Source of the DNA: Macrostomum lignano
Taxonomy: Eukaryota
Assembly: GCA_002269645.1 (NCBI GenBank)
Contig: NIVC01004009.1
Coordinates: 1 to 64,000 of the forward strand
Length of the DNA stretch: 64,000 nt
Reading direction: 5' to 3'
Below the pieces are notes generated by a model that saw nothing but the letters and a program-made list of their open reading frames with translations, ran no database searches and was not told where the DNA came from. The first letter of the stretch is position 1; every line of letters starts with the position of its first letter. The translations under genes were made by a program, and so were the position numbers. This document shows positions 30,127 through 59,931 of the stretch, piece by piece.

Positions 30127-31042
30127 TCAGTTGAAAATCAGGCACTCAAACTTCTTCATCGAGTACGACAAAACAAGTGCGCTAGCAGATCCAGATGCAT
30201 GAAGAAAGTAATAGATTCCCTGTGTGTTAATATTGGGACACACTTGGTAGACTCCGTTCAGCTCCATGAATGCGCACACGCCGTACCACCACCCAGCGGA
30301 CCGGTGTTGTGCGCAGCTGTCTCCACTCCAGTTGTCATTGTCGGAGTCCGGAGTGCTGAACTGCCAGTTGTTTGGAGAGTAGTTCGTATCAGGAAGCTGT
30401 CCGACACTCGACCTGCTCGCGTCCAGAGGTCCCATCGAACACCTGTACTTGTCGCTCGCTGGGCCAACAGAGAACGGAGCATTCTCAGCCCAGTACCAGG
30501 TGCCGTTCCAGTCGCTGAACTCCCAGCGAACTCTCCACACTCCAGTGGCGGTGAGCTGGTGGAGCTGCTCCAGTCCCATCCAGTAGTTGAGACTCTCGCC
30601 CTGACCGAATCCGCTCGTGTAGTCCGCCCAGTTCCGGTTGAAGCTGTGCTGGAAGGTCGTCCAGCACTTCACCGGCTTCCTTATCTGCAATGGGCGATTT
30701 CATGCACGCATATTGAAGCGGTGCTGAAAAGTGCAGAAGCCGCAAAGCAAAGCCCAGATCACTCACCCACAGCTGAGGCAGGCTGGAGTCGCTGGCGTGG
30801 CGGCACTTCCTGCAGGCGTCCATCGCTCCCCGATCGCAGGCCAGCAGCGAGCAGGAGCCCGAGGCCGCGTCGAAGCGGACGGCATCCGCGTTCTCAGCAA
30901 CCGTTGTACAGTGAATGTCGCTGATGGCCAGCTTCACCGCCAGCACCCGGTACTCGGCGAGGTCGCCTCTGTGGATCTCCCAGCCGGAGTCTGCGGCAAC
31001 AGCAGTTGTCATGACAGCGCAGATGATTAGCAGAGAATGCAT
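30127..31042 (-). CDS. Secreted PAN/apple-like + fibrinogen C-terminal (FReD) protein, 2 exons (31042-30767, 30684-30127)
   Basis: Signal peptide MHSLLIICAVMTTAVAA; phase-0 intron GTGAGT..TTGCAG; FReD motifs FNRNWADYTSGFG, YWMGLEQLHQLT, FSTPDSDNDNWSGDSCA, GWWYGVC. Confidence 0.9.
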
Positions 31043-31383
31043 TGTGCCGTGAGACAGCAGTTGTTTGAGATTCCGCAGTTTTGCTCCGTGTGTTGGCATC
31101 CCCGGAGGCTGCGCTTTGATAACTCGAGTTTGGAGGTGACTGAGTTTTGTTTATTTACAACTGCTTGGCAACAATGAGCGCACAAGCGGATGAGGAAAGA
31201 GAATTGAGACGTCAATTTTTACTACTCAGTGTACAGTTAGCGGAACGGCTGGAGGACAAAAGCAGGAGACACAGCAATTGCAGACGATTATATTCGCTAA
31301 TGTAAGCAATTGGCTAATGAAGCGAGAAAAACTAGAAATTGTGATTACGAGTAATGGAGGCTAAAAGCAGAATAAAAAACGCA

Positions 31384-31724
31384 AGAATCGCCTTCTAATC
31401 GTCCTAAGAATCGCCCCAAATCGTCCTAAGAATCGCCCCTAAACCTTCCTAAGAATCGCCTTCTAATCGTCCTGAGAAGCTCCCTCAAATCGTCCTAAGA
31501 ATCGCCTTCTAATCGTCCTGAGAAGCTCCCTCAAATCGTCTTAAGAATCGCCTTCTAATCGTCCTGAGAAGCTCCCTCAAATCGTCCTAAGAATCGCCTT
31601 CTAATCGTCCTGAGAAGCTCCCTCAAATCGTCTTAAGAATCGCCTTCTAATCGTCCTGAGAAGCTCCCTCAAATCGTCCTAAGAATCGCCTTCTAATCGT
31701 CCTAAGAATCGCCTTTAAATCGTC

Positions 31725-31725
<1 letters not shown>
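31384..31725. repeat. 46-bp higher-order repeat of two alternating 23-mers
   Basis: AAGAATCGCCTTCTAATCGTCCT alternating with GAGAAGCTCCCTCAAATCGTC(C/T)T. Confidence 0.9.
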
Positions 31726-32640
<915 letters not shown>

Positions 32641-32726
32641 GAGAGAGAGGAACGCACATCCAATCCCAGGCGCTGACACGGTGAAAGGACTGATAAAAGT
32701 CAATTTACTTCGAAATAGTTAATGTT

Positions 32727-32952: not shown

Positions 32953-33380
32953 AAAAATCAGTGTTTCATGCAGTGCAAGTTGGTCTTTTAAGTATTAGTT
33001 TTCTCAGTCTAATAAAATCGCTGAGCTGCTGTACATATGAGGGGTGTACATTTAAACTGGGTTCATTCTAGCTCTAACTTGTCCCAGAGGCTTTCAACCG
33101 GTCAGTTTAAGCGACGGTATATTTAGTATATTAAAAAATTGTTTTTTCGAAGTTACGATTAAATAAAATGCGGTATTGAGGGTGGGAGCATAAAAATCGA
33201 CATTTGTGCGTACAGTCAAGCAGTTTGAATAAAATACACGACAAAGTGAATAAATATTGTAGTTCTATAGGTAAAAAGAGCGCATTGGTTAAAACGATTC
33301 AATGGTTTCCTGGCTGGACGCTGGACGATCCGTTGGAAATAGACCCAGATCTCAACCTTCTTCCATTTCCGATTGAAAAC

Positions 33381-34487
33381 ATGGCGCGAAGGAATCCTGC
33401 CGTCCATCGAGACATTAAAGAGACAGTTGGGTCTTACACTATGGACAAAGATTTTGCGACCTTCATTGACCACTTTGATTTGGTATCAAGAGAATATGGA
33501 TTACAAAATCCAGAAAAGGCGCTACTCCTCCCTCCATTGCTACAAGGCACAGCCCGAGAAATTTATGGAAAATTAGATGCAGCTACACAACGAGATTACC
33601 ATGCCATGATCACCCAACTTCGAACACAGTTCGCACGATGCGGAACCAATCGATCGGTGTTGTTACATAAATTACATAACCGGAAAATGACACCCACGGA
33701 ATCATTCCTCACCTTTGTCGATGATATTCGACAAATCATCAAAGCCTTGCATCAACAGCAACCGCAACCAGCAGCAGCAGCTCAACCCCTTGGACCAGCA
33801 GAAGTGGCTGCTAGAGAAAGACAACGGCTTGCAGATCAAAAGCAAAGTCTAATTCTTAATGTCATTAACAATGCTCAACCTGCCTTGCGAGATAGACTCC
33901 TGCGAGAAACAATTGAGACAGAAGAACAGTTACTCCGCTGTGGAATGCAGTGGGAGGCAAGCGCACCTCTTCTGGCTAACCGCACTAGTGACACCGCACA
34001 ATTAGCAGAACAATTAAGCAAGCTTATGCAACAACACCAAGCCGCAGCAATTGCAATGCGCCCGCCACAAAGCAACCCTCGAAACGTTACTTGTCACAAT
34101 TGTGGAAGAGTAGGTCATTACTACAGAGATTGCCGCCAAAACTTGCGTCAGAATCAACCACGAAATTATTCCGGTGGAAACAGACGAGACAACTGGTCCC
34201 GCTATCCAAACCAACAATATCCATCAAACAGAAATCGGATGAATAATCGACCACCACCATGGCGGGATAACTTACAACCTTACAACTCACGCCGACCCGC
34301 TCCACCAAGGCAGCCAACGCAGGTGCATAGACAGTACACACAGGCCATTGAACCACAGGCCAGTGAACAACAGGCTATCGAACCAAAATTTTCGGTAGAA
34401 GAATTAACACCAGATTTCAGTATCAACGTACGTGATACTCTCTTTGAAGATACCGACTACATGTTACCATCTCCAACGGTGCAATAA
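33381..34487 (+). mobile_element. Ty3/Gypsy gag
   Basis: Retrotransposon-gag-like DFATFIDHFDLVSREY..LLQGTAREIY and CCHC knuckle CHNCGRVGHYYRDC; no 5' LTR recognised upstream. Confidence 0.85.
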
Positions 34488-36480
34488 TCCGAACCGGAAT
34501 ACGAGAATCTTGCTACAATTCTTAATGCTGAAAAACGGAAACGGACAAACAAAGGTGTGAACACTCAACCGTTCCACTTCTCACGTAACCGATTCACTCA
34601 AACAGAAGATAACACCTACGTTACGATGAATGTCGGAGAACTGCATCAACAGACTTCTTCTACGCCGACTCGACCAGAATTCATGGGTACCTTTCGAAGA
34701 CACCCTACAGCGTGTCACCCACCAGCGTATCAGGAACCTTTAACACCTGTACCCCACTCAAGAAAATGGTTCTTCCGTCCACAAGACATCACTCCATCTG
34801 AAGAACCAGAAAACGACTACGAGGAACTGGACGAAACCACGATCACAAGTCACTCCAACAAGAAAGGAGAACAAGAAGAAAGTATGCCGATGCCGAAGAA
34901 GAGCAAGAAGAGACACCCTCTAATGAAATGGCTATTTGCGATGATCCTTTTCGTCCTGCTACCACTGGTAACTTCAACTTCAGTACCAATGATTTGTCCT
35001 ACAGACGCTACCATCCAGCCGGTCATCTACAAAATTCCTACGGAAATCAAATGCAGTTATTTTAAGACGAATCAAACAAAGCCGCTACCGCTTACAATCG
35101 ACATCTACAAAGCGAATACAAAGAAGCATCGACAGATGGGAATTGTGTGCTTTAGAGACAAAGACGAACTCGAAAAGATTTGGTTGGTACAATGGAACCG
35201 AATCAGATATTGGCAAACATCGATGAAGGTATCACATGAAGAATGCCTCCAGTGGAACCAAACCCTGTTTTCCAAAGACGGTGAATTGAAGCTCCACGAC
35301 ACGTCAGCAAACGGAGCGCAACTATTCCGCACCAACAACGTAGCCGAAGGAAGATATGTGCACTACCACGCAGCACGATGGCCTCTGTATACTGTCTACA
35401 ACAGCTATCTGATTCGAAACGTCTTGTTCTACCACAATCCTTTCGAAAACATGGAATCCTTGCAACTACCGCTTGACCAATGCCACTACAGCTCAGGATA
35501 TTGTGCTACTCCTAACTACAACAAAGAGAAAGCTCAAAACTTACCGCTAGCTCCGAATTATTTCCATGACTATCGATACCAAATCGAGTACAGATCGGAT
35601 TCTCGATACAAGGAACCGAGTCGAACTCGCAAATATTTCATCGCATGGGAAGTCAAACTGAAATTGACTGCAAACTACAGAAATACCATACTGTTCAGGG
35701 AAAACTGCTATCTAACATCTTCCTTGCCGATTCTGGAGATCTAGCTCTTACCTTTCCAAAGCAACCAAGCTATACACAACTGAAATGCAAGGAAAACAAT
35801 GAACAACTAATTCTATCTGACCAAGAAATACCAATTGCACTGAAGGACATGGACAAGAATGTATTTTTGAAGGTGATAAATGGTACCTATCCAAGAGAAG
35901 AAACCTTGGAAAGACAAAAGCGAAACTTGCCCAAACCTTCGTTAGTATCAGCACGACTTCTGGCAGCAAAACTAGCCGCCATGGAACACACAAACTGCAC
36001 AAGCAACTGAACTATCTGCATCGCTCCATGGTCAAACTGACATGTCGAATGCACGAGACCAGTCTAAACTACGCGCGACAGAACTACTACGTCAACCCTA
36101 CGACCACCTTCAGGAAAATCACAGGAATTGAAGATGTCCTCGCCGTTCCGGTTTATGGATACTTGCTAATCTACAAGTGTACTCCGATCCATCACTTTAA
36201 CATCTTGTCATCAAACACGTCAACAACTTGCTACGACAAACCGCGGATTGAAGCCTTCTACAATGGAAAGCGAATTCGAGGATTTTTGGATACGGTCCAC
36301 AACATCATTGTCGGAACTGCCATCCCACGACCATGTACCAATTCGGCCAACTATTTCAACGTGAACGATCTACTACATCAAATTTCGCCAACAGGAGACA
36401 TCAAGAACATCTCGAAATCACAAGCCATTGTTGATGAAATTTACGAAATGTCGGATCTTCAACTGAAGTTTAATAGAACA
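34488..36480 (+). mobile_element. env-like glycoprotein, herpes-gB/chuvirus-type class III fusogen-like; C-terminal TM missing; frameshifted
   Basis: Internal signal peptide WLFAMILFVLLPLVTS; cysteine-rich ectodomain (CHYSSGYC); furin-type RQKR; NPTTTFRKITG..VYGYLLIYKCTPI and CYDKPRI..FL..IPRPC match the gB pattern NP..A...G..AV..C.PV / CY.RP.V...EPC. In frame with gag after a single TAA. Confidence 0.7.
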
Positions 36481-36484
36481 ACGA

Positions 36485-38427
36485 AATCCTCATCCCCACA
36501 GCACTGGTACTAATCAGCCGACAAAACGATTCCGGTACAAATCGTCAATCCTAACCAGCACCCAGTGAGAATCTACGCAGGAACCTGCATCGGACATCTC
36601 AGCACACAAGCGTCAGTGATGCTTATTCAATCAACATCGACAACATTGCCAAGGACACAATTCCTAGAACAAATCGATCTGTCACAAAGTCCAATCACCG
36701 AAAAACAAAAGAACCAAGTTAAAGATATTGTATGGAAGTACAACGATGTTTTCTGCCACCACGACTACGACATTGGACGAGCCAAAGACATCAAACAGAA
36801 GATCACACTGCTGCCGCACCAGGAACCGATTCAGTGCAAACCGTGTCCGATTGCAAAACATCTACAACAACACTTCGACGAGATCATCGAGAAAATGCTC
36901 AAAGCCGGTATCATCAAGAAGACAGTTTCAGCCTATTCCTCTCCATGCTTGCTTGTCGAGAAGAAGGACACAAACGAGAGAAGACTTGTCTGCGATTTTC
37001 GAGTCCTAAACAAGTATATCCCGACAGATCAACAAAGCCCACCCAAGATTTCGGAACTAATGGCGAGACTCAACACAGCGACACTCTTCACAGTCTTTGA
37101 TCTACGACATGGATTTTGGCAAATCGAACTAGAAGAAGAGTCTAAGCAATACACAGCCTTTAAGACGTACAATGGAGAAGTCTTCGCTTACCAAAGAAGT
37201 CCTATGGGAATTTCAAACTCACCTGCTACAATGAGCTGACTAACAGCCTACATGCTTGCTGGATGTACCAATCTACTCCACTATGTAGACGATATTCTTG
37301 CCTTCGGAGAAGACTTCGAACAACTACTCCAAACGATGGAACTCGCGTTATTCCTTCTCAGGCGACAAGGTCTCAAACTACAACCCACCAAGTGCAAGTT
37401 TTGCCGAAGCTCGGTACGATACTTGGGACACCACGTATCCGCAAAAGGAATCTCACCAGATCCAAGTAATGTGGAGAAAGTAAAGAAATTACCACGAACA
37501 ACCTCTATAACAAAATTGCAGTCCTTTCTTGGACTAGCACAGTATTTCCGAAAGTTTCTGCCAAACTTTGCCAAAACTGCCAAACCGCTATACGAACTGC
37601 TCAAACAACCAAAGTGGAAGGAAGAAAACTGGAAGGACGAACAACAAGAAAGCTTCGAAAAGATCAAACAGCAACTGACGACCGACGCCTTACTGCAACA
37701 TCCAAACTTCCAAAAACCCTTCATCATTGAAACCGACGCCTCAGGAAGTGGACTAGGCGCAGTTCTACTGCAAGAAACGGAAAGAAAAGTCGAAAAGCCC
37801 ATCGCCTACATCAGTCGAGCTCTACGACCAAACGAAACCAAATGGTCCGCCACAGAAAGAAAATTACTTGGAGTTCTGTTCGCACTACGACAGTTTCACT
37901 ACTACATCTACGGTTCTCCATTACCGACAATTTTCAGAACCGACCATGCACCGCTGACGCACGTTGTCCAGACGAAAGGACAGACTAACAACCGCCTCAT
38001 CCGAATGACACTCAAAATTCAGGATTACAACTTCCAACTAGCCTACAAACCGGGACCACTCAACAAAGCAGCAGACGCACTCTCCAGAGCTTACGAAGTC
38101 AACGCTATCCATCCGATTCCGAAAATGCAAGAACTGATTACAGCACAGCAAGACGACAACTTCTACAAAGCCGCACAAAACACCGACGACACCACGCAAG
38201 CCAAATTAACAGAACAAGAAAGAAAATTCCTTAAAAAACAGCGCGACAACCTAATCTTCAAAGAATCAATCCTTTATTGGATCTGTGACAATATTCCGCG
38301 AATCTATCTGCCATATTTGTTTCGACCCGCTATCTTGCAAGAATTGCACGACATGCCATTAGCCGGACACCTTTCCGCTAAGAAGACAATCGAACGAGTG
38401 ACAAAATTCTACTTTTGGCCGACAATG
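36485..38427 (+). mobile_element. Gypsy pol: RT-RNase H (protease absent)
   Basis: YSSPCLLVEKKD..RLVCDFRVLN, DLRHGFWQI, YVDDIL, FIIETDASGSGLGAVL, FRTDH, NKAADALSR; TGA at 37237. Confidence 0.95.
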
Positions 38428-39907: not shown

Positions 39908-41923
39908 ATGGCTAAAAAATTCGAATGCCCTGTCTGTCTAGACAACAACCTTCCGAAGAAACCGCCATGTATATGTGTAAATAATCACCGCACATGCGGC
40001 ACTTGCCTCAGTGACGCTCATTATATCCAGCCCTGGCGAAATTGCCCCATGTGTCGAAGCGCTCTACGCCAATGCATGATTTGTACATCATGGCGCACCT
40101 ACAAGTTCTGTACCAATGAACATTTTCTATGCATGCGTTGCATCAAGAAATTAGCTAGGCGATCAGTGCTTCTGTGCCCTGAATGTGATGCTTTTCCTCT
40201 GGTAAAAATGCGCGACCAACTTTTACGTATACAACCGGTACAAACGGTTCAGTTATCTGCATCCATAGTGCATCAACTCGCTCCAATAGACGTTATTCGC
40301 CGACTAGACAAGTGGCCCCTTCCTAAAAACTCTCGCTCCGCATATGTGCACCTCGTTATGTACGAGGTGTATTCAAAAAGTTCTTTTCGGTGCCCTACAA
40401 AACTGAACACAAAACAACTGGAACTATGAAAACACTGTTAGATTGCTTAACATGATTCTGTCACTCAACATATTCACCGCCAATGTCTTTGCACTTCTGC
40501 CAGCGATTTACCAGGCCTCTGATTTCGGAACTCACACCACTCGCGTCCGTTTGGCGAACAGCTTGATTGCATGCAGCTTCGATGTGCTCGACGCTGTCAA
40601 ATCGAATGCCCCGAAGGTGCTTCTTCACAGATGGAAATAAGAAGAAGTCGCACGGCGACAAATCAGGCGAATAGGGTGGATGTTGGAGCACTTTCCAGCC
40701 CCATTTGCTCAGGAGTTCCACGACGTTGTGCTTGCGATGTGCTGGCGCATTGTCGTGCAGCAGGATCACGCCAGATTCCAGCAGACCAGGGCGCTTCTTT
40801 CGTATTGCTGGGCGCAGCTTCTCCTGCAGAATCCACTTGTAGTAGTCCCCATTGACGGTGGTTCCTTGTGGGACTGCCCAGTTCAGCAGGATTCCTAGGG
40901 AATCAAAAAACATGACGTGCATGATCTTTATCGCGCCCTGCTTCCTGATGGCCTTCTGAGGTCTTGGAGAATGTGCTGGAAGCCATTCGGCAGACTGGGC
41001 CTTTGTCTCAGGATCCCAGCTGTAAACCCACGTCTCGTCTCCAGCAACAATTCTTGATAGAAAATCCTCCCCTTCTCGATGGAACCGACGCAGGTGGCTG
41101 CTTGAAGCCAGAGTTCGCTGCATCTTTTGCTCACCTGTCAGCAGGTGTGGCACCCACTTGCAGAACTTTTTCTGTAGGAGAAGACGCTCAGTCAGAATAG
41201 TGTGGACGCTTCCACTGACACACCAACGTCTTCTGCCAACTCTTCGCAAGTCCGTCGCCGATCATCATCCAAGAGCTCTTGCACTTTCTTCACAACAGTC
41301 TCTTTGGTTGCAGTCATCGGCCTTCCAGAGCGGCCATTGTCCTCAACGCTCTCTCTTCCCTCAGCGAACAGCCGGTACCATTTTCGAACTGTCTGCTCAG
41401 TTGGTGCACAGTTGCCAAGCACTTGCTGAAGCTCCCTAAACATATCCGGTGGCTTTTTTCCTTGCAGAAACTGAAACTTCATCAAGCTTCGAACGTCTTG
41501 CTTTGAAAATGATTCAGCCATGGCCAAGAAATTGAGTGGCAGCTGATAGAAATGTTCGCTGCTCTAACATAGTTGCAAACTGAGACTTAAAACCCTAGGA
41601 ACGTTTAGGCCATAGACATAACTTGGTAAAATCGCTAAAATTCTGCTTACAACGCTTTCTAAAAATAAATGCCAAAGGACCGAAAAGAACTTTTTGAATA
41701 AACCTCGTACACACATCATAATAGACACCGACTAATACTCTTCCCGTTACAACGAAATCAACAACGTTTGTTACAGTATCTATCAATATGCGAACAGCCA
41801 AGTCTTCCATTCCACTGTGCTATAATACCCCTACTTATTAAGAAGCATGCCGATTTAACGATGTTATTAAAGTATAGCGAGCTAATAGCCTGGCAAGGCG
41901 ATACGTACGACGAAGTCGATTAA
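39908..41923 (+). CDS. Double-RING protein A (39908-40362 + 41708-41923), interrupted by mariner
   Basis: CPVC..C.NNH.TC.TC..CPMC followed by a second C..C.NEH..C..C..CPEC; reading frame resumes after the transposon and matches 45046-45276. Confidence 0.8.
40363..41707 (-). mobile_element. Mariner (DD34D) transposon, full length, one frameshift
   Basis: About 29-bp TIRs CGAGGT(G/T)TATTCAAAAAGTTCTTTTCGGT; TA duplication; DETW, HDNAPAH, YSPDLSPCDF; empty site present in the paralogous copy near 45060. Confidence 0.97.
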
Positions 41924-41956
41924 TAAAGTATACCAGTACCTCCCCTTATTCCCCAG

Positions 41957-42559
41957 ATGGAATCATGTCCCGTGTGCTACGAGGAAGAAATCACACCATA
42001 CGTCTACTGCCAGAACGGACACAAGCTGTGTTTCCTCTGCTGCACTACAGAACTGATGGACAAGTGCCCCCTGTGCCGAGCACCACCTACCAACTGCCAA
42101 GTGTGCAACGAAGTCCCACAAAGGCAACTCTGTGGAAACAAGCACTGGGTATGCCACGACTGCGTAATGTCAATACAGTGACGCAACATGACAAGGTGTG
42201 TCACCTGCGCTCAACCAATCTTAATCGACACCCCGGGCAACAATGACCACATAATCACGCTAACGACGAATACCTTAAACAACTTAAGGACAACTGATCT
42301 TGCCCAGATCATCAGAGAGTGGCCTATACCCTACAACCGGCAGCCACAGCTAACCTTCTTGTTCCAACGGGCCCGACATTACGCCATGACGACAAACGCC
42401 CTTCCTGCGGAGGAAATCTACCTCAACCTACTTCACGAGACCAACACTCAGGAGTACACAGCCGTTCAACACCTCATCTGGCCCATAGCATTACTAACGG
42501 CAAGTATCAACAATTACTTCATCACAACGCTCAACGACCACTTTGCTTCTTGCTACTAA
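41957..42559 (+). CDS. Double-RING protein B (internal TGA at 42179)
   Basis: CPVC..CQNGH.LC.LC..CPLC / CQVC..C.NKH..C..C..C..C followed by the shared REWP...EEIY..L...QHL.WP tail. Confidence 0.8.
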
Positions 42560-42686
42560 ACATTCACATAGCTCAATTGACTCTACCTTCCACCAATTAT
42601 GGCCACATAGAAAACAGCATTGTTTCTACGCACCAATCACAAACAATAACCATCGAAACACCCGAGTCCACTACAATTAGTCTACG

Positions 42687-42740
<54 letters not shown>

Positions 42741-42810
42741 ACTACTCGCCTACATACATAGCACACGCCTTACGAAACTACCCTACCACGCTACCATATC
42801 TTGCCTTACA

Positions 42811-43419
42811 ATGCCTGAAGTAGAATGCCCCGTCTGCCTGGAGGAGGCCACCTACCAGCAGGTGATGTGCCAATACGGGCACAAAACCTGCTTCAGGTGC
42901 GTCGACTCCGGCATGATAGCCATTTGCCCACTATGTCGCGACCCCCTAATAGCGTGTAGCCTTTGCGGGGACAATCCCCAGGTGAAGCTGTGCCAGTCTC
43001 GTCACTGGTGCTGCTTCACCTGCCTGCAAAGGCTGGGTACACGTGGTATCACCTATTGCCCTAATTGCCTTGACACTCTCCTTCCCCCGACAGTAGAATT
43101 AAACCAAAATACCGAAATCTGGCCAGAGGTGGGCCTGCATAACCTGGAACAATTCACCGAACGAGAAATCGCCGACAATATCCGAGAGTGGCCGCTGCCG
43201 GTCGAGTTGCACGACGCACGCCAGCGACTGCTAGCTTTCGGCCGGCAACAAGCGGTTACGGAACCGCCTAGATCGGCGGAGGACATCTACAACCAACTAA
43301 CTGATACGATGAACAGCTCCCACTACATCCCACTACAACATCTGTTCTGGCCAGTCGCCAGCTTGGTGACACGAACGCAACGATACATCCGGCGCACCTT
43401 GACGGACATTTTTCAATAA
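42811..43419 (+). CDS. Double-RING protein C (intact)
   Basis: CPVC-x10-C-x3-H-x2-C-x2-C-x8-CPLC, then CSLC..CQSRH..C..C..CPNC, then the shared helical tail. Confidence 0.85.
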   Translation: MPEVECPVCLEEATYQQVMCQYGHKTCFRCVDSGMIAICPLCRDPLIACSLCGDNPQVKLCQSRHWCCFTCLQRLGTRGITYCPNCLDTLLPPTVELNQNTEIWPEVGLHNLEQFTEREIADNIREWPLPVELHDARQRLLAFGRQQAVTEPPRSAEDIYNQLTDTMNSSHYIPLQHLFWPVASLVTRTQRYIRRTLTDIFQ

Positions 43420-43719
43420 ACATTGTGACACTGTCATGTACTCTTGCTTATCTTAACTGATTTACTTACGTAACTGTTTTGCTTGTATGTGTTGCTCCCT
43501 CATGTGTATCTTGTATACTCATATTTTGACTCTCCCCAATAAGTGACAATGACTATGTCTTCACCAACTTACTTAGCATCTGGCATGCAATTGCTTCCTT
43601 GTTCACATACTCAGCTGAAAATTATTATAATAACCATGTAAATAAAACAATATTCACCAGTTCAACCCTTCAGCTTATAAAACAAATTCGAGACGAATTT
43701 TTTGTAAAAAAGGAGATAT

Positions 43720-44690
43720 TGTAGAGATCTCCAAATACGATACAAAGTAAACTACTGTAAGTAGTAACATAAAAAAGCGAAAAACTTGAATGTTATAAAA
43801 ATTGCAAAATTGTCATACTCTATTTTAAGACCGTGAATACAACGTACGACGAAGCATGAGACAAGTTGCTACTATGGTGAAATATGTTGCAACTATGGTG
43901 AAATATGATAAAATATGATGAAATCTGATGAAATATGATGAAATATGAGTCGCGCTACTAAGTATATACCAAAAATTCGTCTATAAATATAAGCGTAAAA
44001 TCCGAGCTGAAACCTCAGACTCGGAGCAGCCTCAAAAGATCTTGTGGTTAGTTAGAGCAACTAATCGACGCTATATCTCTGGGAGAGAAGCGTATCAATT
44101 GTGAAGTGTTGTTCAAGTCTTCGTTATTTTGATTAATTAAGAGCGATTTTATTGCCGGCCGGCCGTTGCTGATCCGTTGAATTTACTGAGACTATTTTAG
44201 GCCTCCCATTTTCCTAAGCGATTGGATAGGATCTGCGGATCGATTCCGATACCCTTAGAGGATTACTGACTGTTGATTTGGATTATCCTAGATTAACAGA
44301 TAGGAGCACACGACTCCCATTCCGTTAGATCTAAAAGAAGACGCCCCTTTTGGAGGACCTCGCGTTAGAATTCGAGTTTATTAGGGCGCTCTGTTGATAC
44401 TGATTTGGCACTCGAGAAACGTACTGAATCCCGCACTCAAGGAGATATTTCGACGTCGACTTCACTGTTCTGCTCTCACTCTCGGCCGACTTTGGACTTC
44501 GAAGACTTCAAGAAGATTCCTCCGGAGAAGAAGATTGGAAGAAGCGAACTCTACAAACGCGCGCATTAAAGAAGAAACAAGGAACAAGCTCGGAGAACCT
44601 GCCCGACACAGAAGAAGAATCCGCCACAGTAAGTGCACACGTTAAATTTGTTCCCAGGCTTAAGTGTCTGGAAGTGGGAGTTTACGGGTG
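43720..44690 (+). mobile_element. 3' LTR of the RING-carrying Gypsy element, about 1 kb (3' end approximate)
   Basis: PPT AAAAAAGGAGATAT directly followed by TGTAGAGATCTCC; TATAAATA near 43983; 3' block CCCAGGCTTA..GTCTGGAAGTGGGAGTT shared with 52012-52040. Confidence 0.7.
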
Positions 44691-44714: not shown

Positions 44715-45276
44715 TTCAACCATATCCAATTTTGGCAAGCCTGCCCCATATGTCGTGGCGCCCTATGACAATCTATGATTTGTACATCATGGTGCACCCA
44801 AAAGTTCTGTAAAAATGAACATTTTCTATGCATGCAGTGTACCAAGAAACTAGCCGCTCGAAAACTGCTTATGTGCTCTGAATGCGATGCCTTTTTCCTT
44901 AGTACAAATGCGCGATCAACTCCTACGCATACAACTGGTACGAACGGTTCAATTGGCTGAAAACATTGCGTACTAACTCGCTCCAATAGACGTTATTTGT
45001 CGACTAGACGATTGTCTATTTCCTAGAAACTCTCGCTCGGCATATGTGCACCTCGTTATGTACGCACATCATAATAGACACCAACTAATACTCTTCCCGT
45101 TACAACGTATTCAGCAACGTCTTTTAAGATACTTATCAACATGCGAATTACCATGCCTCCCATTTCATTGCGCTATATTATCGATACTTATTAAACGAAA
45201 TGCTGATTTAACCATGTTAGTAACGTACAGTGAGTTAACAGCCTGGCAAGGCGATACGTACGACGAAGTAGATTAA
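44715..45276 (+). pseudogene. Double-RING A' (5'-truncated, frameshifted)
   Basis: CPICRGAL..MICTSWCTQKFCKNEHFLC; C-terminus matches A. Confidence 0.8.
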
Positions 45277-45309
45277 TAAAGTATACCAGTACCTTCCCTT
45301 ATCATCCAG

Positions 45310-45912
45310 ATGGAATCATGTCACGTGTGCTACGAGGAAGAAATCACACCATTTGTCTACTGCCAGAACGGACACAGGCTGTGCTTCCTCTGCTGCACTA
45401 CAGAAATGATCGACAAGTGTCCCTTGTGCCGAGCACCACCAACGCACTGCCAAGTGTACAACACCGTCCCACAACTACAACTCTGTGAAAACAAGCACTG
45501 GGTATGCCACGATTGCGTAATGTCAACACAGCGACACAAAATCACAAAGTGTGTCACCTGCGCTCAACCGATCCTGGTCGACACTCCGGACAACAATGAA
45601 CACAAAGTCACACTAACGACAGACAGCTTGAACAACATGACGACAACTGACCTTGCCCAGATCATCCGAGAGTGGCCTATTCCCTACGACCGATAACCAC
45701 AGCTAACCTTTTTGTTCCAACGGGCCCGACATTACGCCATGATGACAAATGCCATTCCTGCGGAGGAGATCTACCTAAGCCTACTGCACGAGACCAACGC
45801 TCAGGAGTACGCAACGGTTCAACACCTAGTCCGGCCCATCGCACTACTAACGGCAAGCATCAATAATTACTTCATCACAACGCTCAATGACCACTTTGCC
45901 TCTTGTTATTAA
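45310..45912 (+). pseudogene. Double-RING B' (internal TAA at 45694)
   Basis: Colinear with B over its full length. Confidence 0.8.
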
Positions 45913-46113
45913 ACAATAACATAGCTCAATTGACTAACACTCAGATAGGGATAAATAGTAAACACCTACCTTCAACCAATTATGGCCACGCAAAAAAACA
46001 TTGTTTCTACGCACCTATCACAAACAATAACCATCGACACTCCCGAGCCAACTGCAATTAGTCTACGATAACATATATAGGCCACGGCTCGCCAACATAC
46101 ACAGCGCAGGTCC

Positions 46114-46420
46114 TGTTGTGACTTTTCATGCAAATAAAGTAGAGAGCGCTAAATAGAAGTTTGTAGTTAACGAGAGAGCGTTCTGGAGCTAGAGAGCCCG
46201 CGCGCGAGCCTAAATAACTTACTAGCCGATTTTATTGATTCGCGTAGATAACAGAACCACAGAAGAGGGGGTGGAACGTACATTTATCGAGAAAGATAAG
46301 CGATGGACGAAGGGGGGTGGCGTACATGGGGGGCCGAGGCGCTGATCAATAAGGTGGATGGTTAGGCAGAGAGGGGAGCAAGTGCAGGCGCACTTATATT
46401 AAAATAACAATTTAGCGACA
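46114..46420. mobile_element. Solo LTR (307 bp) with 5-bp TSD GGTCC
   Basis: GGTCC-TGTTGTGAC...TAGCGACA-GGTCC; absent from the equivalent spacer in the first cassette. Confidence 0.85.
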
Positions 46421-46444
46421 GGTCCTACTAAATCTTCATTTACA

Positions 46445-46737
46445 ATGGCAAACACAGAAGAAGAGTGCCCTGTGTGTTGGAGGCGGCCACCTTCCAGCAA
46501 GTAATGTGCCAATACGGGCACAAAACCTGCTTTAGGTGCGTCGACTCAGGAATGATAGCTACGTGCCCCCTATGCCGCGACCTGTTAATAGCTTGTAGCC
46601 TTTGCGGGGACAATCCCCAGGTGAGGCTGTGCCAGTCCCGTCACTGGTGCTGCTTCACCTGCCTGCAAAGGCTAGGTACACGCGGCATAACTTACTGCCC
46701 CAGCTGCCTCGGCACACTTCTTTCCCCGACGGTCTGA
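46445..46737 (+). pseudogene. Double-RING C' (1-bp deletion, 3'-truncated)
   Basis: Nearly identical RING region to C. Confidence 0.8.
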
Positions 46738-47700
46738 AAAGTACTATAAAAAGCTCATGTTAACCAAGCAAGAAGCTCGCCCCTCCCTGGCCTTGCCTCT
46801 CTTTCGCCTCTCTTCTCCCTTCTCGCTATTCTAACTACTTTTGGTTAAAACAGCTAGGGTCTCAACCCAAACACTAAAACTGATAAATTGACTCACTAAA
46901 ACTAAAACAACAACCAACCCACGTTCCACAATAGACGGAACCTTCGGTTCACCCGAACACTTAGAAACCCATTGGAACTCGAACAAAACGAGCTTCTTAT
47001 TTGGAATTCCATCTTAGACATTATATTTTGTAAGATAACATCTCGAGATTGTGACCATCAAATACAACGGTCTATAAGTTACCATCAAGTGTTTGCATCA
47101 TCAGGAAAAGTCAGTTGAATCCGCCGCCTCAGTTATTTGGCTCTCACATTGATATTTGAAGTAGAACAAGAGCCATAGAAGTGAGAGACCAGAAGAAGAA
47201 CAATAACATATATTTTAAAATATTTCACTCCTCTATGCGACGTAATGTACAGAATATGTGCCACTGCAGCATCTAATATGGCCGATGGCATGTCTAACAC
47301 AAAAGACACGGAACTAACATGGGATACATTCTGATACACATAACTATTCTGAGACTAACAGATACGAGCTACAGTAAGATAGTGCAACGTTGTTCTACTA
47401 TATCGGAATTCTTACACCCATGCCTGACTCAAATATACTCGTACCAATAGATATAACATGGTATCACAGGAAAATACTTTTAATCTATGTCCAGGCCACC
47501 GTAATTCAGAGTGAAACTTGAAACCAATGCATGCCGGCCTAGAAAATATGCGCTACTTTTCACCAATTAAAATTTAATGGTTGCAACAACGAACCAATGA
47601 TAGCCGCCATGCGTACCTACATATATATACTCATTAACAACCATCCATGCCTTGCCAAACACCCTTTGTAAAAATTTAACACAAGACTATACCCTCCGAG

Positions 47701-48324
47701 ATGGAAGATATGTGCCCCGTTTGCCTGGAAGAGAAATCCCAGCAACGACCCCTCTGCCAGAACGGTCATGGAATATGTTTCACCTGTTTCGATATGGGCT
47801 TCAGTCACAACGGTTCATTATGCCGTGATCCGATCATTAGCTGCAGACTTTGTGGGGAAGATCCCAACGTGAAACCATGTAGCTCCAAACACTGGAGCTG
47901 TTTCACATGCCTCCAGAGGCTAGCACGACGGGGCATTAGCTATTGCCCCACCTGCTTCGGGCCGATAGAACCGGCCGCAGCTCATCTAGTACAACAAACG
48001 CCAAGACACAATGAACTCGGTCTCAACAACCTAGAAGCCTTACCAGCACATGAGATTGCTGCCAATGTGCAGGCTTGGCCAATACCAACTAGCCTGCACG
48101 GTGCGCGTCAACATCTTCTGGCCGTTGGACGATACTACACCATGGCCGACAGTTTGCTGATCCCGGAGGAGGAGGTGTACTACCACCTCCTCGAGGCAAC
48201 AGAAGACACGCAGCTAACCACAATTCAACACCTCATGTGGCCCGTGGCGGTGTTGACAGCCAGAGTACAGAGAATATTCCACATATTTTTGACGAACATT
48301 TCGATTAGAAAAAAAACAAGCTAG
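47701..48324 (+). CDS. Double-RING protein D (diverged C-like; first RING partly degenerate)
   Basis: CPVC..CQNGH..C..C..NGSLC / CRLC..CSSKH..C..C..CPTC plus QAWP..EEEVY..QHLMWP. Confidence 0.8.
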   Translation: MEDMCPVCLEEKSQQRPLCQNGHGICFTCFDMGFSHNGSLCRDPIISCRLCGEDPNVKPCSSKHWSCFTCLQRLARRGISYCPTCFGPIEPAAAHLVQQTPRHNELGLNNLEALPAHEIAANVQAWPIPTSLHGARQHLLAVGRYYTMADSLLIPEEEVYYHLLEATEDTQLTTIQHLMWPVAVLTARVQRIFHIFLTNISIRKKTS

Positions 48325-48516
48325 GACTCTCACCTGCATACGAACATATTTAAACTTTTAACGCGACAATCGGTTATTACGGTTTAATATTATGTCAATA
48401 TATTGAATATATCAAATAACGTTTTCCATATCATTAATGAGCCGCTTGCCTACTGTAAATCGCCTTTAAGTCCCAACGTAAATTCGGGAGAAATTTTTCG
48501 TAAAAAAGGGAGATAT

Positions 48517-48640
48517 TGTTGAAGTCTCCAAGCCTCATAACCTACTAGAAGTAGTAAGATAAAACTATGAATACTATTTAAAAATTAACATGCGTCAAAG
48601 TAATAATTTTTAGTAATACATGCAATATCACGTAAACAGA
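48517..48640 (+). mobile_element. PPT and start of a related LTR (truncated)
   Basis: AAAAAAGGGAGATAT followed by TGTTGAAGTCTCC; upstream AAATTCG.GA.AA.TTTT..TAAAAAAG shared with 43685-43719. Confidence 0.7.
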
Positions 48641-51816: not shown

Positions 51817-52061
51817 TGTGGAGATCTCCAGGTACGGTACAAAGTAAGTCACTATACTGGTAAGTAGTAACGTAAAAACGTGAAAACTCAAAAGCTAAAA
51901 ATTGCAAATTTTAAGACCACGAAAGCAACAAATGATCATATTTTGCAACATTTAAATTTATAACTCTGAATATGGTATTCGAGGCTCAAACCTAATGCAT
52001 TCTATAGGGGTCCCAGGCTTAGGGTCTGGAAGTGGGAGTTCGAGCGTTTAGACACTAGACA
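51817..52061 (+). mobile_element. Internally deleted LTR of the RING-Gypsy family
   Basis: Starts TGTGGAGATCTCC like 43720; joined to the 3' block seen at 44655-44685; ends AGACA. Confidence 0.65.

Positions 52062-52065: not shown

Positions 52066-52155
<90 letters not shown>
52066..52155. repeat. (CT)n microsatellite
   Basis: Direct inspection. Confidence 0.95.
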
Positions 52156-52158
<3 letters not shown>

Positions 52159-52396
52159 CTCTTCTCGTTCTCTCTGTCTTTCCCTGCCTCTCTCTAGTGT
52201 GCTAAAGCGAACTCCTTACTGCTCCATTCTGAAGCTGGGTTTGGAATCTGCAACATGAAATGCTGCTAAAGAGTTATGAGAAGCGGTCACTTTGATGTCA
52301 GGATGGAAAGCGTTTGAAGTCAGTAATGAAAGAATATTGACTAATTTCGAACTCTCTGTACCCCCACAGTACCTTGCCTTTCTGCTAAAAAAGTGT

Positions 52397-53302
52397 CATT
52401 TCAGTTTTAGAATACATCTTAGTGTCAATTTCAGTTTTAGAATACATCTTAGTGTCAATTTCAGTTTTAGAATACATCTTAGTATCAATTTCAGTTTTAG
52501 AATACGTCTTAGTGTCAATTTCAGTTTTAGAATACATCTTAGTGTCAATTTCAGTTTTAGAATACATCTTAGTATCAATTTCAGTTTTAGAATACATCTT
52601 AGTATCAATTTCAGTTTTAGAATACGTCTTAGTGTCAATTTCAGTTTTAGAATACATCTTAGTGTCAATTTCAGTTTTAGAATACATCTTAGTATCAATT
52701 TCAGTTTTAGAATACGTCTTAGTGTCAATTTCAGTTTTAGAATACATCTTAGTGTCAATTTCAGTTTTAGAATACATCTTAGTATCAATTTCAGTTTTAG
52801 AATACATCTTAGTGTCAATTTCAGTTTTAGAATACATCCTGGTGTCAATTTCAGTTTTAGAATACATCTTAGTGTCAATTTCAGTTTTAGAATACATCTT
52901 AGTGTCAATTTCAGTTTTAGAATACATCTTAGTGTCAATTTCAGTTTTAGAATACATCCTGGTGTCAATTTCAGTTTTAGAATACATCTTAGTGTCAATT
53001 TCAGTTTTAGAATACATCTTAGTATCAATTTCAGTTTTAGAATACGTCTTAGTGTCAATTTCAGTTTTAGAATACATCTTAGTGGTCAATTTCAGTTTTA
53101 GAATACATCTTAGTGTCAATTTCAGTTTTAGAATACATCTTGGTGTCAATTTCAGTTTTAGAATACATCTTAGTGTCAATTTCAGTTTTAGAATACATCT
53201 TGGTGTCAATTTCAGTTTTAGAATACATCTTAGTGTCAATTTCAGTTTTAGAATACATCTTAGTGTCAATTTCAGATTTAAAATACATCTTAGTGTCAAT
53301 TT
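52397..53302. repeat. 30-bp minisatellite, about 30 copies
   Basis: Unit TTTCAGTTTTAGAATACATCTTAGTGTCAA. Confidence 0.97.
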
Positions 53303-53780
53303 CAATTTTTGTGTAGACATTGTTTACGTGCCCATTAGCATCGTCAATTAATTGTAACGGCGATATTCATTGCGTCATTATCTTCCTTTGAATAAGAGTC
53401 TGAAACATTTCTATTAGCTAACAATAAATTATACATTTCCTCTCAGTAGAATGCATGAGGCGGCTTTTGAGACAATTTTTTTATTGTCCTCCATAATCCT
53501 ATTAAATCCATTCATATTATACCCGACAGAATCAGAAAAAAGGGGAGTCGCACTTGCTCCGAAAACTTCGAACATAATCCTCCTAAATCCATCCATATTA
53601 TCCCTGACAGAATCAGAGCATAACAGGTGTCCTACATAATCCACTGACATCCACCCATAGCATCTTCGAAACAATCAGAAAATAATCTGTATTCTTCTCC
53701 CCACATTCATTTCGCAACGCTAAACCAGATCCTCAGCGCAGGGTGCTCATCCCCTGAAAAAAATTAAATTCTTAATAAAA

Positions 53781-54725: not shown

Positions 54726-55119
54726 TGTTAGACCCACCCATTTGCCAGCACTAAAACAGCCACGCAGACCATGCGCGCCCTCTCTGTGTTAATCCATCTA
54801 ACTAGCTAACTATGCAAAAAAGCAAATAAGATGGGTGGGGCGGAAAAATATCACGCCACCACCCCAACACTGCCCCCGAGCACAATGCTGAGTGTTATAA
54901 ATACAATGCAATTGGAAGAGCCGAGGCTCTCCACTGCCGAGTTTAGTAAAGTTTGAGCTCAAACCTAAGAAAGGACTTGTCTCAGTTCTTCGAAGTTTCT
55001 GCCTGTCGTGGCAGAGGGGTAGCAGGCAACACTTAATTTTAACCCCTCTATCACGGAATCATTCACAGGACAGCAGATCACACCCAACAAATAGTGCTTC
55101 CATTCAAGTTTCGCGAAAC

Positions 55120-59360: not shown

Positions 59361-59361
59361 T

Positions 59362-59781: not shown

Positions 59782-59931
59782 CCAAAATATCGGTACCAGC
59801 AAAGCAAAAGAAAAAAATCGATAGTAGACAAGACAAAATACCCTTGCATATAGCTTTTAAGCGTGGTTATTGTGTATTTAATCTGAGGTTTCTCAAATTT
59901 TTAAAGTCTTTTTGTTGCTCTTGTTGCTCAT

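What the first reader, a model, noticed from the sequence alone, without database searches (positions are those of the whole stretch)
39908..43720. LTR retrotransposon carrying a cassette of three paralogous double-RING (putative E3 ligase) genes
Seen: between the integrase stop and the PPT/LTR lie three sense ORFs, each with two tandem C3HC4-like RINGs (C-x3-H spacing, as in SINA-type CxNGH). B, C and D also share a C-terminal REWP..EEIY..QHL.WP helical domain. Established: RING E3s are immune-evasion genes of large DNA viruses, and complex accessory genes are typical of retroviruses rather than Gypsy elements. Inference: a 'complex' invertebrate endogenous retrovirus with amplified ubiquitin-ligase accessory genes, possibly countering host silencing or immunity.
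Basis: partly seen in the sequence, partly recalled or inferred. Interest (0 to 1): 0.86.

Follow-up and report, generated by a model that had tools for sequence, protein, structure and literature searches.

The report
Retrovirus-like element carrying RING-finger gene cassette
A degraded retrovirus-like jumping gene in an invertebrate genome really does carry, between its integrase and its terminal repeat, a set of small genes that look like ubiquitin-ligase enzymes; a diverged relative has the same arrangement, and I found no earlier report of this kind of cargo.

Summary
Sense-strand genes A, B and D lie between the integrase stop (39802) and a purine tract plus LTR start (43720). Each has two tandem C3HC4 RINGs and a helical tail.

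- **LTR edge:** 43720 is a true LTR edge. The PPT and LTR-start block recurs after a further RING gene (E, 48517). The LTR start recurs at 51817, where similarity begins exactly at the TG.
- **Second copy:** a partial second cassette (A'-B'-D'-E, 44718-48324) belongs to a second element copy, not to a host array. The two cassettes diverged under purifying selection (dN/dS 0.07-0.43).
- **Independent relative:** Logan contigs from other samples show an integrase 68% identical to the window's, then an A-type RING gene after about 120 nt, then a second RING gene.
- **Rarity:** the protein family has 5 relatives among 1.84 billion cluster representatives.
- **State of this copy:** it is dead. It has no 5' LTR, pol and the env-slot gene are broken, A is split by a mariner-like transposon and B has one stop. 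Only D and E are intact.

E3-ligase activity and a counter-defence role are inferred, not shown. No precedent turned up in the literature I searched. I rate it a new variant of LTR elements that carry additional ORFs.

The parts
33204..34487 (+). gag of element 1 (single ORF, CCHC zinc knuckle)
   Evidence: ORF list. Pfam zf-CCHC E 1.6e-4. Weak similarity to the gag of relative L006.
34557..36513 (+). env-slot gene between gag and pol. It is broken into three ORF pieces in three frames, so at least 2 frame changes if it was once one gene. It has a TM segment, Cys-rich and N-x-T/S-rich sequence, and an R-x-K-R motif.
   Evidence: ORFs. No Pfam, PDB or fold assignment. The same slot in relative L006 holds a PF24664 fusion glycoprotein. 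The GAG-ENV-POL order is reported in PMC13524379.
36565..39802 (+). pol of element 1 (RT, RNase H, integrase). It is broken by one in-frame stop and by one insertion of about 0.3 kb with a frame change. No protease domain was detected.
   Evidence: Pfam RVT_1, RT_RNaseH(_2), Integrase_H2C2 and rve. Protease motif scan. Comparison with the L001 integrase ORF.
39908..41927 (+). RING gene A (A-type double RING with a WP motif). It is broken by one nested DNA-transposon insertion, and stops are present in its 3' part. The 3' bound is approximate, set by homology with copy 2 and with P0124.
   Evidence: The orthologue-like P0124 in L001 is 41% identical.
40461..41527 (-). transposase gene (two ORF pieces) of a mariner/Tc1-like DNA transposon nested in gene A. 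The transposon is absent from cassette copy 2.
   Evidence: Pfam Transposase_1, DDE_3 and HTH_48. Terminal inverted repeats, and comparison with the uninterrupted copy.
41957..42559 (+). RING gene B (double RING plus tail, 200 codons). It is broken by one in-frame stop.
   Evidence: It is 86% nucleotide-identical to B'.
42811..43419 (+). RING gene D. It is intact: two RINGs and a helical tail of about 90 aa.
   Evidence: AF2 model pLDDT 84. RING hits only in the fold searches.
43684..43719 (+). conserved 3' internal end of element 1, including the polypurine tract (GTAAAAAAGGAGATAT)
   Evidence: 85% identical to 48480-48516 downstream of gene E. Absent upstream of the third LTR copy.
43720..44690 (+). 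3' LTR of element 1 (long form; starts TGTAGAGATCTCC; the end is approximate)
   Evidence: The start recurs at 48517 and 51817. The end motif at 44666-44682 recurs only at 52024-52040, against 0.14 expected by chance. There is a TATA-like box near 43981.
44718..45279 (+). A' of the element-2 fragment. It is 5'-truncated inside the first RING and broken by at least 1 frameshift and several stops.
45310..45912 (+). B' of the element-2 fragment. It is broken by one in-frame stop.
46457..46737 (+). D' fragment (RING region only, 89% aa identity to D). It has lost its start and its tail.
47701..48324 (+). RING gene E. It is intact (207 aa), of D/E type, 47% identical to D.
48480..48564 (+). PPT and LTR start of element 2 (the LTR begins at 48517)
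51817..52045 (+). third, short LTR copy of the same family (shares the start and end segments; the end is approximate)

Best explanation
The region is the 3' half of a Ty3/gypsy-type, retrovirus-like LTR element with the gene order gag - env-like - pol. Its lineage has acquired a compact cassette of paralogous small proteins between integrase and the polypurine tract, and has kept that cassette under selection. Each protein has two adjacent C3HC4 RING fingers followed by a lineage-specific helical tail.

**Shown**
- The cassette lies inside the element, in the IN...PPT/LTR interval.
- The same layout closes a second, adjoining element copy.
- The integrase / A-type / second-RING order recurs in a relative with 68% integrase identity.
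- The cassette genes evolved under purifying selection while the element lineages diverged.

**Inferred**
- The proteins are E3 ubiquitin ligases. RING1 would bind an E2~ubiquitin: it has C-P-[V/I]-C, C-P-x-C and a near-invariant Arg after the last Cys. The variable helical tail would select the substrate.
- The several diverged paralogues (A, B and D/E types, 24-47% identical) would give the element several targets. These are most likely host factors that restrict or silence it; less likely, its own proteins.
- The genes are probably expressed from spliced or processed subgenomic RNAs. Pyrimidine-rich tracts followed by AG abut several start codons, and in one relative a stop codon abuts the next ATG.

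This particular insertion is an inactive relic.
For: **Anatomy:**

**LTR edge**
- After D and after E the purine tract and the TGT(A/T)GA are conserved.
- In the third copy, similarity starts exactly at the TG.
- The LTR-end motif occurs twice, against 0.14 expected by chance.

**Independent linkage**
- L001 (Logan SRR31628437) carries an intact integrase ORF 68% identical to the window's, with the same ...LRPR C-terminus. A 119-nt spacer follows (105 nt in the window), then the A-type gene P0124.
- The 3' end of L001 overlaps L002, which continues into a second RING gene, P0122. There the stop codon of the first gene abuts the ATG of the second.

**Selection**
- Cassette copy 1 against copy 2: dN/dS is 0.39-0.43 for A, 0.23 for B and 0.07 for D, at dS 0.36-0.62.
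- Integrase, window against L001: dN 0.21, dS saturated, both ORFs open.

**RING identity**
- The family profile hits solved RING E3s with both fingers.
- The AF2 model has pLDDT 84.
- Foldseek finds SIAH1, TRAF6, TRIM and giant-virus RINGs.
- Near-invariant columns include all Zn ligands, the Arg after Cys8 of RING1, and the W-P of the tail.

**Rarity:** 5 relatives at E<=1e-10 among 1.84e9 representatives. A more distant pol relative, L006, has no RING genes.

**Start-codon context:** AG immediately precedes ATG in 5 of 8 distinct genes, against a 7.7% background (p about 1e-4, post hoc).

**Precedent for spliced accessory genes in Ty3/gypsy elements:** Cer1 CERV (PMC10309623).
Against: - No full-length copy with paired LTRs and target-site duplication could be examined. 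Element 1 lacks a 5' LTR and a PBS.
- Apart from the window, the only evidence comes from short contigs of about 1-2 kb from unidentified samples.
- The one named relative is a Macrostomum lignano gene model with no genomic context available.
- No biochemical or expression data exist. Pfam RING hits are below the gathering thresholds. RING2 lacks a basic residue after its last Cys.
- The tail has no recognisable relative, so substrate binding is conjecture.
- The AG|ATG pattern was noticed post hoc, and in one case the AG is part of a stop codon.
- The dN/dS values rest on 50-200 codons each.
Confidence: 0.7

Rival explanations
1. The RING genes are a host tandem gene array, and the retroelement merely landed next to it or captured it locally at this one locus.
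For: RING genes also occur downstream without an adjacent pol (A', B', D', E). Element 1 has no 5' LTR. The only named relative is annotated as an ordinary protein of Macrostomum lignano.
Against: - The downstream set ends with its own PPT and LTR start, so it is a second element copy.
- The integrase / A-type / second-RING order recurs in a relative with 68% integrase identity. Its integrase ORF is intact with dN 0.21 and saturated dS, so it is not a decaying orthologous relic.
- The breakpoints of copy 2 lie inside genes, not between them.
Confidence: 0.07
2. The cassette belongs to the element, but the proteins are not counter-defence ligases. They would serve the element's own cycle as structural, matrix-like or RNA/protein-handling factors. 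The arenavirus RING protein Z in budding and Cer1 CERV in genomic-RNA export are comparable cases. Alternatively they would ubiquitinate Gag or Env for trafficking.
For: The arenavirus Z RING appears among weak profile hits (E 0.07). The element has an env-like gene, so it may need budding functions. CERV shows that invertebrate Ty3/gypsy elements can encode non-enzymatic accessory proteins.
Against: - RING1 keeps the residues typical of E2-binding RINGs, including the near-invariant Arg after the last Cys.
- Retention of several strongly diverged paralogues (24-47% identity) fits diversification of targets better than a single housekeeping role.
- There is no direct evidence either way.
Confidence: 0.2
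3. The intact genes at this locus (D and E) are now host-domesticated genes derived from the element, kept by the host, for example as restriction factors, while the rest of the element decays.
For: D and E are the only intact cassette genes in two otherwise broken element copies. D against D' has the lowest dN/dS, 0.07. A Macrostomum gene model consists only of such units.
Against: - Two short ORFs of about 600 nt can stay open by chance in copies of this age.
- The constraint measured is between two element copies, and D' is itself a fragment. The constraint therefore reflects the period before insertion, not preservation at this locus.
- No population or orthology data are available.
Confidence: 0.1

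Closest known systems
GAG-ENV-POL 'errantivirus'-type Ty3/gypsy elements of Platyhelminthes, Nematoda and Bryozoa (PMC13524379)
   Same: - Ty3/gypsy pol with the RT - RNase H - IN order.
- A glycoprotein-type gene placed between gag and pol. The window has TM/Cys-rich ORFs there, and relative L006 has a PF24664 fusion glycoprotein there.
   Different: - That survey describes no gene between pol and the 3' LTR; the words RING, accessory and ubiquitin do not occur in its text. Here that interval holds 3-4 RING genes.
- Homology of the window's env-slot ORFs to class III fusion proteins could not be shown.
LTR retrotransposons with captured additional ORFs: bdelloid rotifer ORF3 types GDSL, DEDDy and env (PMC5408684); plant aORFs (PMC7264820); an m6A-demethylase domain in orchid Ty3/gypsy elements (PMC9289625)
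   Same: An extra gene of cellular or viral origin sits downstream of pol, inside the LTRs, and is kept within a sub-lineage of elements.
   Different: - The cargo class is a RING-type putative E3. RING is not mentioned in PMC5408684, and none of my four literature searches for RING cargo in LTR elements returned such a case.
- The cargo is a tandem cassette of several diverged paralogues, not a single ORF3.
CERV accessory protein of C. elegans Cer1 (PMC10309623)
   Same: An accessory, non-Gag/Pol protein of an invertebrate Ty3/gypsy element, expressed from a spliced mRNA with acceptors ahead of the initiator ATG. Here, AG-type acceptor-like contexts abut several start codons.
   Different: CERV overlaps gag-pol and is not a RING protein; its function is nuclear export of genomic RNA. 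Splicing is not demonstrated here.
RING E3 ligases encoded by large DNA viruses (herpesvirus ICP0-type, ostreid herpesvirus, giant-virus and baculovirus RING proteins) and the arenavirus Z protein
   Same: A small virus-encoded protein with a C3HC4 RING. The EHV-1 RING (1chc) and arenavirus Z appear among weak sequence hits. Giant-virus, ostreid herpesvirus and adintovirus RINGs appear among fold hits.
   Different: - The similarity is generic to the RING fold: about 50 residues, and no hit at E<=0.001 in Foldseek.
- No homology extends beyond the finger.
- Those viruses are not retroelements.
- The tandem-RING plus helical-tail architecture was not found in any of them.
SINA/SIAH E3 ligases
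   Same: The C-x3-H spacing with a C.NGH..C..C motif. The closest cellular sequence and fold matches are SINA/SIAH: Pfam Sina_RING at sub-threshold E 1.6e-5 to 3e-3; SIAH1 RING-ZnF1 is the top PDB fold hit; the SINA-like P0126 has E 2.6e-9.
   Different: The SIAH zinc fingers and the substrate-binding (TRAF-like) domain are absent. The second module is another RING, and the tail is an unrelated helical bundle.
Accessory proteins of complex retroviruses that redirect ubiquitin ligases (Vif, Vpu, Vpx/Vpr of primate lentiviruses; from general knowledge, not tested here)
   Same: Small accessory genes in the 3' part of a retroelement genome. The proposed outcome is the same: ubiquitin-dependent removal of host restriction factors.
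   Different: Those proteins are adaptors that hijack host cullin-RING ligases and contain no RING. Here the element would encode the RING subunit itself. There is no sequence relationship.

Membership tests
Ty3/gypsy (Metaviridae-type) LTR retroelement | pol domain order RT - RNase H - integrase, and gag with a CCHC knuckle | tested here: met
   Pfam RVT_1, RT_RNaseH(_2), Integrase_H2C2, rve and zf-CCHC, in that order. The closest database pols are Ty3/gypsy-type at 36-46% identity.
Ty3/gypsy (Metaviridae-type) LTR retroelement | polypurine tract abutting a 3' LTR that starts with TG | tested here: met
   A three-way alignment of 43660-, 48456- and 51757- shows a conserved PPT in the two internal copies and similarity starting at the TG in the third.
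Ty3/gypsy (Metaviridae-type) LTR retroelement | two LTRs flanking the internal region, a PBS after the 5' LTR, and a target-site duplication | tested here: not met
   No copy of the LTR start or end motif, and no similarity of any kind, lies upstream of gag. This copy is 5'-truncated or rearranged. The family does have LTRs: three copies of the start and two of the end are in the window. The target-site duplication could not be assessed.
Ty3/gypsy (Metaviridae-type) LTR retroelement | aspartic protease domain upstream of RT | tested here: not met
   No Pfam protease hit, and no convincing D[ST]G motif in an open frame between gag and RT. Relative L006 has only a weak RVP_2 hit.
GAG-ENV-POL errantivirus-like elements (PMC13524379) | a class III (gB-type) fusion glycoprotein gene between gag and pol | tested here: inconclusive
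   ORFs with a TM segment, a Cys-rich ectodomain-like sequence and R-x-K-R occupy the slot, and L006 has PF24664 there. No homology or fold could be shown for the window's ORFs.
RING-type (C3HC4) zinc finger / RING E3 ligase | eight Zn ligands with C-x2-C-x(9-39)-C-x(1-3)-H-x(2-3)-C-x2-C-x(4-48)-C-x2-C spacing | tested here: met
   Both fingers have it in A, B', D, E and the relatives, and the ligand columns are near-invariant. The profile hits solved RING E3s with both fingers. RING fold matches are at 2-3 A over about 50 residues. Pfam hits are below the gathering scores.
RING-type (C3HC4) zinc finger / RING E3 ligase | E2-contact features: an aliphatic residue between Cys1 and Cys2, Pro after Cys7, and a basic 'linchpin' residue after Cys8 | tested here: met
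   RING1 has C-P-[V/I]-C and C-P-x-C-R, and the Arg is at least 90% conserved. RING2 has the first two features but not the basic residue. The assignment of these residues to E2 binding comes from general knowledge of RING E3s.
RING-type (C3HC4) zinc finger / RING E3 ligase | ubiquitin-transfer activity with an E2 | not testable with these tools
   No biochemical data are available.
SINA/SIAH family | RING followed by SIAH-type zinc fingers and a TRAF-like substrate-binding domain | tested here: not met
   Only the RING matches, and below threshold. There is no Sina zinc-finger or TRAF-like domain hit. The tail is a helical bundle with no match.
RBR (RING-between-RING) ligases | RING1 - IBR - RING2(Rcat) architecture | tested here: not met
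   The two fingers are directly adjacent, about 5 residues apart, with no IBR between them. Both have full C3HC4 patterns, and there is no IBR Pfam hit.
Retroelement accessory genes (the position and expression mode of complex retroviruses) | location inside the element, between pol and the 3' LTR, conserved among related elements | tested here: met
Retroelement accessory genes (the position and expression mode of complex retroviruses) | expression from spliced subgenomic RNA | not testable with these tools
   The only evidence is sequence context, Y-rich tract + AG|ATG, in 4-5 of 8 genes. No transcript data are available.

The most novel reading that the evidence does not exclude
A lineage of invertebrate retrovirus-like Ty3/gypsy elements encodes its own diversifying family of RING E3 ubiquitin ligases. 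The genes are arranged as a multi-gene accessory cassette expressed from processed subgenomic RNAs. They would mark host restriction or silencing factors for degradation. On this reading the element supplies the ligase itself, whereas lentiviral accessory proteins hijack host ligases.
Probability: 0.3. Interest if true: 0.85.

Novelty: new variant of a known kind. Interest (0 to 1): 0.72.

Why it matters
LTR retroelements are usually thought of as gag-pol machines, sometimes with an env. Extra genes are rare, and each one reveals a pressure the element faces.

A selected, multi-paralogue cassette of putative ubiquitin ligases would be the first case I could find of a retroelement carrying the RING subunit itself. 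It would extend the accessory-gene logic of complex retroviruses and large DNA viruses to invertebrate Ty3/gypsy elements.

It also gives a concrete handle on unknown host restriction or silencing factors in flatworm-like invertebrates: four diverged tail domains, each potentially specific for a target. In addition, it defines a small, previously unnamed protein family of tandem RINGs with a W-P helical tail.

Tried and rejected
**Searches that added nothing**
- A word-indexed homology search with D found nothing. With the enlarged alignment it returned only two already-known members.
- Exact look-ups of D and of P0121 found no contig, and P0007 was likewise not on record. The source genome is therefore not in the collection.
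- A metagenome scan with a family-specific integrase alignment gave one unrelated 28% hit. The viral-contig scan could not be run because the alignment has no conserved stretch.
- The first repeat finder was swamped by a 23-bp tandem array and was replaced by self-BLAST.
- No tRNA genes were found.
- No paper names the SRA runs.

**Structure**
- Fold searches of the D model found no relative for the tail.
- Pfam at E<=10 and PDB phmmer found nothing for the env-slot ORFs.

**Ideas considered and rejected**
- RBR ligase: there is no IBR.
- SIAH membership: there is no substrate-binding domain.
- A simple local segmental duplication of dead DNA: dN/dS is far below 1, and copy 2 has its own PPT and LTR start.
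- L001 as the orthologous relic locus: its integrase is under constraint and intact.

**The second integrase:** the integrase at 55.1-56.2 kb belongs to a different family (31-39% aa identity) and is unrelated to the cassette.

Full report
**Observation.** The integrase ORF of a plus-strand Ty3/gypsy-type element ends at 39802. Three genes of one family follow on the same strand: A (from 39908), B (41957-42559) and D (42811-43419).
- Each gene has two directly adjacent C-x2-C...C-x3-H-x2-C-x2-C...C-x2-C fingers.
- B and D share a tail with W-P, EE(I/V)Y and QHL.WP motifs.
- A profile of the family matches solved RING E3 ligases with both fingers (RNF2, TRIM21, SIAH1, BRE1, MDM2; E about 1e-5). 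Pfam gives only sub-threshold Sina_RING/zf-C3HC4 hits.
Gene A is interrupted by a nested mariner/Tc1-like DNA transposon (Pfam Transposase_1 and HTH_48, terminal inverted repeats). B carries one in-frame stop. More RING genes follow beyond 43720.

**Is 43720 an LTR start?**
- No LTR pair is visible by self-BLAST, and nothing upstream of gag resembles the sequence after 43720.
- A sensitive search did find the block 43684-43774 again at 48480-48564, 192 nt after the stop of a further RING gene, E. It found the part from 43720 onward a third time at 51817-51929.
- In the three-way alignment, the purine tract (GTAAAAAAGG(G)AGATAT) and the following TGT(A/T)GA are shared by the copies after D and after E. 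The third copy becomes similar exactly at TGTGGAGATCTCC and is unrelated upstream. A PPT/LTR junction and a free LTR edge should behave this way.
- A 17-nt motif near the predicted LTR end (44666-44682) occurs only once more, at 52024-52040, against 0.14 expected by chance.
- The LTR is therefore real. There is a long form (43720 to about 44690) and a short form (51817 to about 52045) that shares its first ~115 nt and last ~30 nt.

**The second cassette.**
- 44718-46737 repeats the cassette from the middle of A to just after the RINGs of D, at 81-88% nucleotide identity and without the mariner.
- About 1 kb of unmatched sequence follows, then the intact gene E (47701-48324, 47% identical to D), then the second PPT and LTR start.
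- This is a fragment of a second copy of the same family abutting the 3' LTR of the first, not a host array.
- The two cassettes differ by dS 0.36-0.62, with dN/dS of 0.39-0.43 (A), 0.23 (B) and 0.07 (D). A duplicate of dead DNA would give values near 1. The copies therefore diverged as functional lineages before ending up here.

**Independent relatives.**
- An exhaustive profile search of 1.84 billion cluster representatives found only five relatives at E<=1e-10. One is a Macrostomum lignano gene model made of several fused units. The other four are on short Logan contigs.
- Contig L001 (SRR31628437) carries an open integrase ORF 68% identical to the window's, ending in the same ...LRPR. A 119-nt spacer follows (105 nt in the window), then the A-type gene P0124, 41% identical to A.
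- The 3' end of L001 overlaps L002 (SRR31628394; 157 nt, 87%). L002 runs straight into a second RING gene, P0122, with the stop codon of the first gene abutting the ATG of the second.
- Between the window and L001, integrase has dN 0.21 with saturated dS, and both ORFs are open. These are constrained element lineages, not a shared decaying relic.
- A more distant pol relative (L006, 37%) has no RING genes. The cassette is therefore a trait of a narrow sub-lineage.

**The element.**
- Between gag (CCHC) and RT lie about 2 kb of ORF pieces with a TM segment, Cys-rich and N-glycosylation-type sequence, and an R-x-K-R motif.
- In L006 the same slot holds a gene with the PF24664 viral fusion glycoprotein domain (E 2e-45).
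- A 2026 survey reports the GAG-ENV-POL order for env-carrying Ty3/gypsy elements of Platyhelminthes, Nematoda and Bryozoa (PMC13524379).
- I could not show homology or fold for the window's env-slot ORFs, so that part rests on position and features only.
- The copy is dead:
  - No 5' LTR or PBS was found.
  - The env-slot gene is in three frames.
  - pol has one in-frame stop and one insertion of about 0.3 kb with a frame change.
  - No protease was detected.
  - A has a transposon insertion and further stops.
  - B has one stop.
  - D is intact.
- In the second copy, A' is 5'-truncated with a frameshift and stops, B' has one stop, D' is a fragment and E is intact.

**The proteins.**
- AlphaFold2 on D with the eight available sequences gives pLDDT 84 and pTM 0.68. 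The model shows two small RING-like modules and a bundle of about five helices.
- Foldseek against the PDB and against BFVD returns only RING domains (SIAH1 RING-ZnF1, TRAF6, TRIMs, giant-virus and herpesvirus RINGs) over about 50 residues. It returns nothing for the tail.
- Across window and foreign members, the near-invariant columns are the Zn ligands, the Arg right after the last Cys of RING1, and the W-P of the tail.
- RING1 has C-P-[V/I]-C and C-P-x-C-R. From general knowledge of RING E3s, these are the E2-contact and 'linchpin' positions. RING2 lacks the basic residue.
- D and E are more alike in the RING half (56%) than in the tail (39%).
- The family is not SIAH (no SIAH zinc fingers or substrate-binding domain) and not RBR (no IBR).

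**Expression signals.** The genes are tightly packed. A pyrimidine-rich tract plus AG directly precedes the ATG in 5 of 8 distinct genes, three of them on foreign contigs. The background is 7.7% (p about 1e-4, noticed post hoc). In one of the five, the AG belongs to the upstream stop codon. This suggests spliced or trans-spliced subgenomic RNAs, and in one case coupled termination-reinitiation. It is inference only. Cer1 CERV is a precedent for a spliced accessory gene in an invertebrate Ty3/gypsy element (PMC10309623).

**Mechanism and rivals.**
- Best reading: an accessory cassette of element-encoded RING E3 ligases. RING1 recruits E2~Ub and the divergent tails choose substrates, most plausibly host factors that restrict the element. 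The element membership of the cassette is shown. The ligase activity and the targets are inferred.
- Rival: a host array with a chance neighbour. This is largely excluded.
- Rival: a structural or RNA-handling role for the element's own cycle. This remains open.
- Rival: host domestication of the intact D and E genes. This is possible but unsupported.

**Novelty.** LTR elements with captured extra ORFs are known in bdelloids (PMC5408684) and in plants (PMC7264820, PMC9289625). None of my searches found RING or E3 cargo in an LTR element, and the metazoan env-element survey does not mention any. I rate this a new variant of a known kind.

**Limits.** The host species is unknown. Apart from this window the evidence comes from contigs of about 1-2 kb. 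No full-length copy with paired LTRs was available, and there are no expression or biochemical data.

Noticed in passing
window 58563-63996 (minus strand): A cluster of virus-like genes running off the window end:
- protein-primed-type DNA polymerase B with an Endonuclease VII domain (61663-63996)
- dUTPase (59932-60600)
- an ORF with a phospholipase-A2-like domain (59362-59802)
- a P-loop-like ORF (58563-59369)

The cluster looks like a Polinton/Maverick- or adintovirus-like element.
   Followed up: partly
window 55076-57584 (+): Fragment of a second, different Ty3/gypsy family. Its RNase H end and integrase are 31-39% aa-identical to element 1. Two unassigned ORFs follow, and one (57033-57584) has a TM segment, so it is possibly env-like. 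No RING genes are next to it.
   Followed up: partly
L006 (ENA ERZ26696514 contig ctg280923), 1-16553: A relative of the element (RNase H region 37% identical), assembled as a 10.66-kb unit repeated in tandem at 98% identity. The gene order is gag-like (1050 aa), then a PF24664 Monjiviricetes-type fusion glycoprotein, then a small ORF with a weak protease hit, then RT-RH and IN. It has no RING genes.
   Followed up: partly
window 14831-19146 (minus strand): A large intact-looking pol ORF (1065 aa, RT - RNase H - integrase by eye) with an upstream gag/protease-like ORF. This is another LTR retroelement, unrelated to the finding.
   Followed up: no
window 8471-10894 (+) and 21060-23648 (-): Two long paralogous ORFs (807 and 862 aa, helical-repeat-like) in inverted orientation. 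Their 3' parts (9815-10856 and 22199-21158) are 97.7% identical at the nucleotide level. Smaller paralogous ORFs lie beside each (7154-7807 and 23923-24480).
   Followed up: no
window 11183-14000; 28890-29385; 31383-32646; 52066-53309: Several long tandem arrays:
- 40-nt and 23-nt repeats (11.2-14 kb)
- a 15-nt repeat (28.9-29.4 kb)
- a 46-nt repeat followed by about 230 copies of CAGA, immediately upstream of element 1
- a (TC)n tract and then a 30-nt repeat, immediately after the short LTR
   Followed up: no
window 30127-30690 (minus strand): An ORF whose sequence looks like a fibrinogen-related (FReD) domain, which would be a host gene typical of invertebrates. It was not checked against Pfam.
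   Followed up: no
window 46738-47700: About 1 kb between the D' fragment and gene E. It matches nothing else in the window and has no long ORF. Its origin is unknown.
   Followed up: partly
P0121 (UniRef A0A1I8G201, Macrostomum lignano): A 660-aa gene model that strings together at least two and a half D/E-type double-RING units, separated by a repeated acidic linker. It is probably a fused tandem array or a polycistronic transcript. No genomic context was retrievable.
   Followed up: partly
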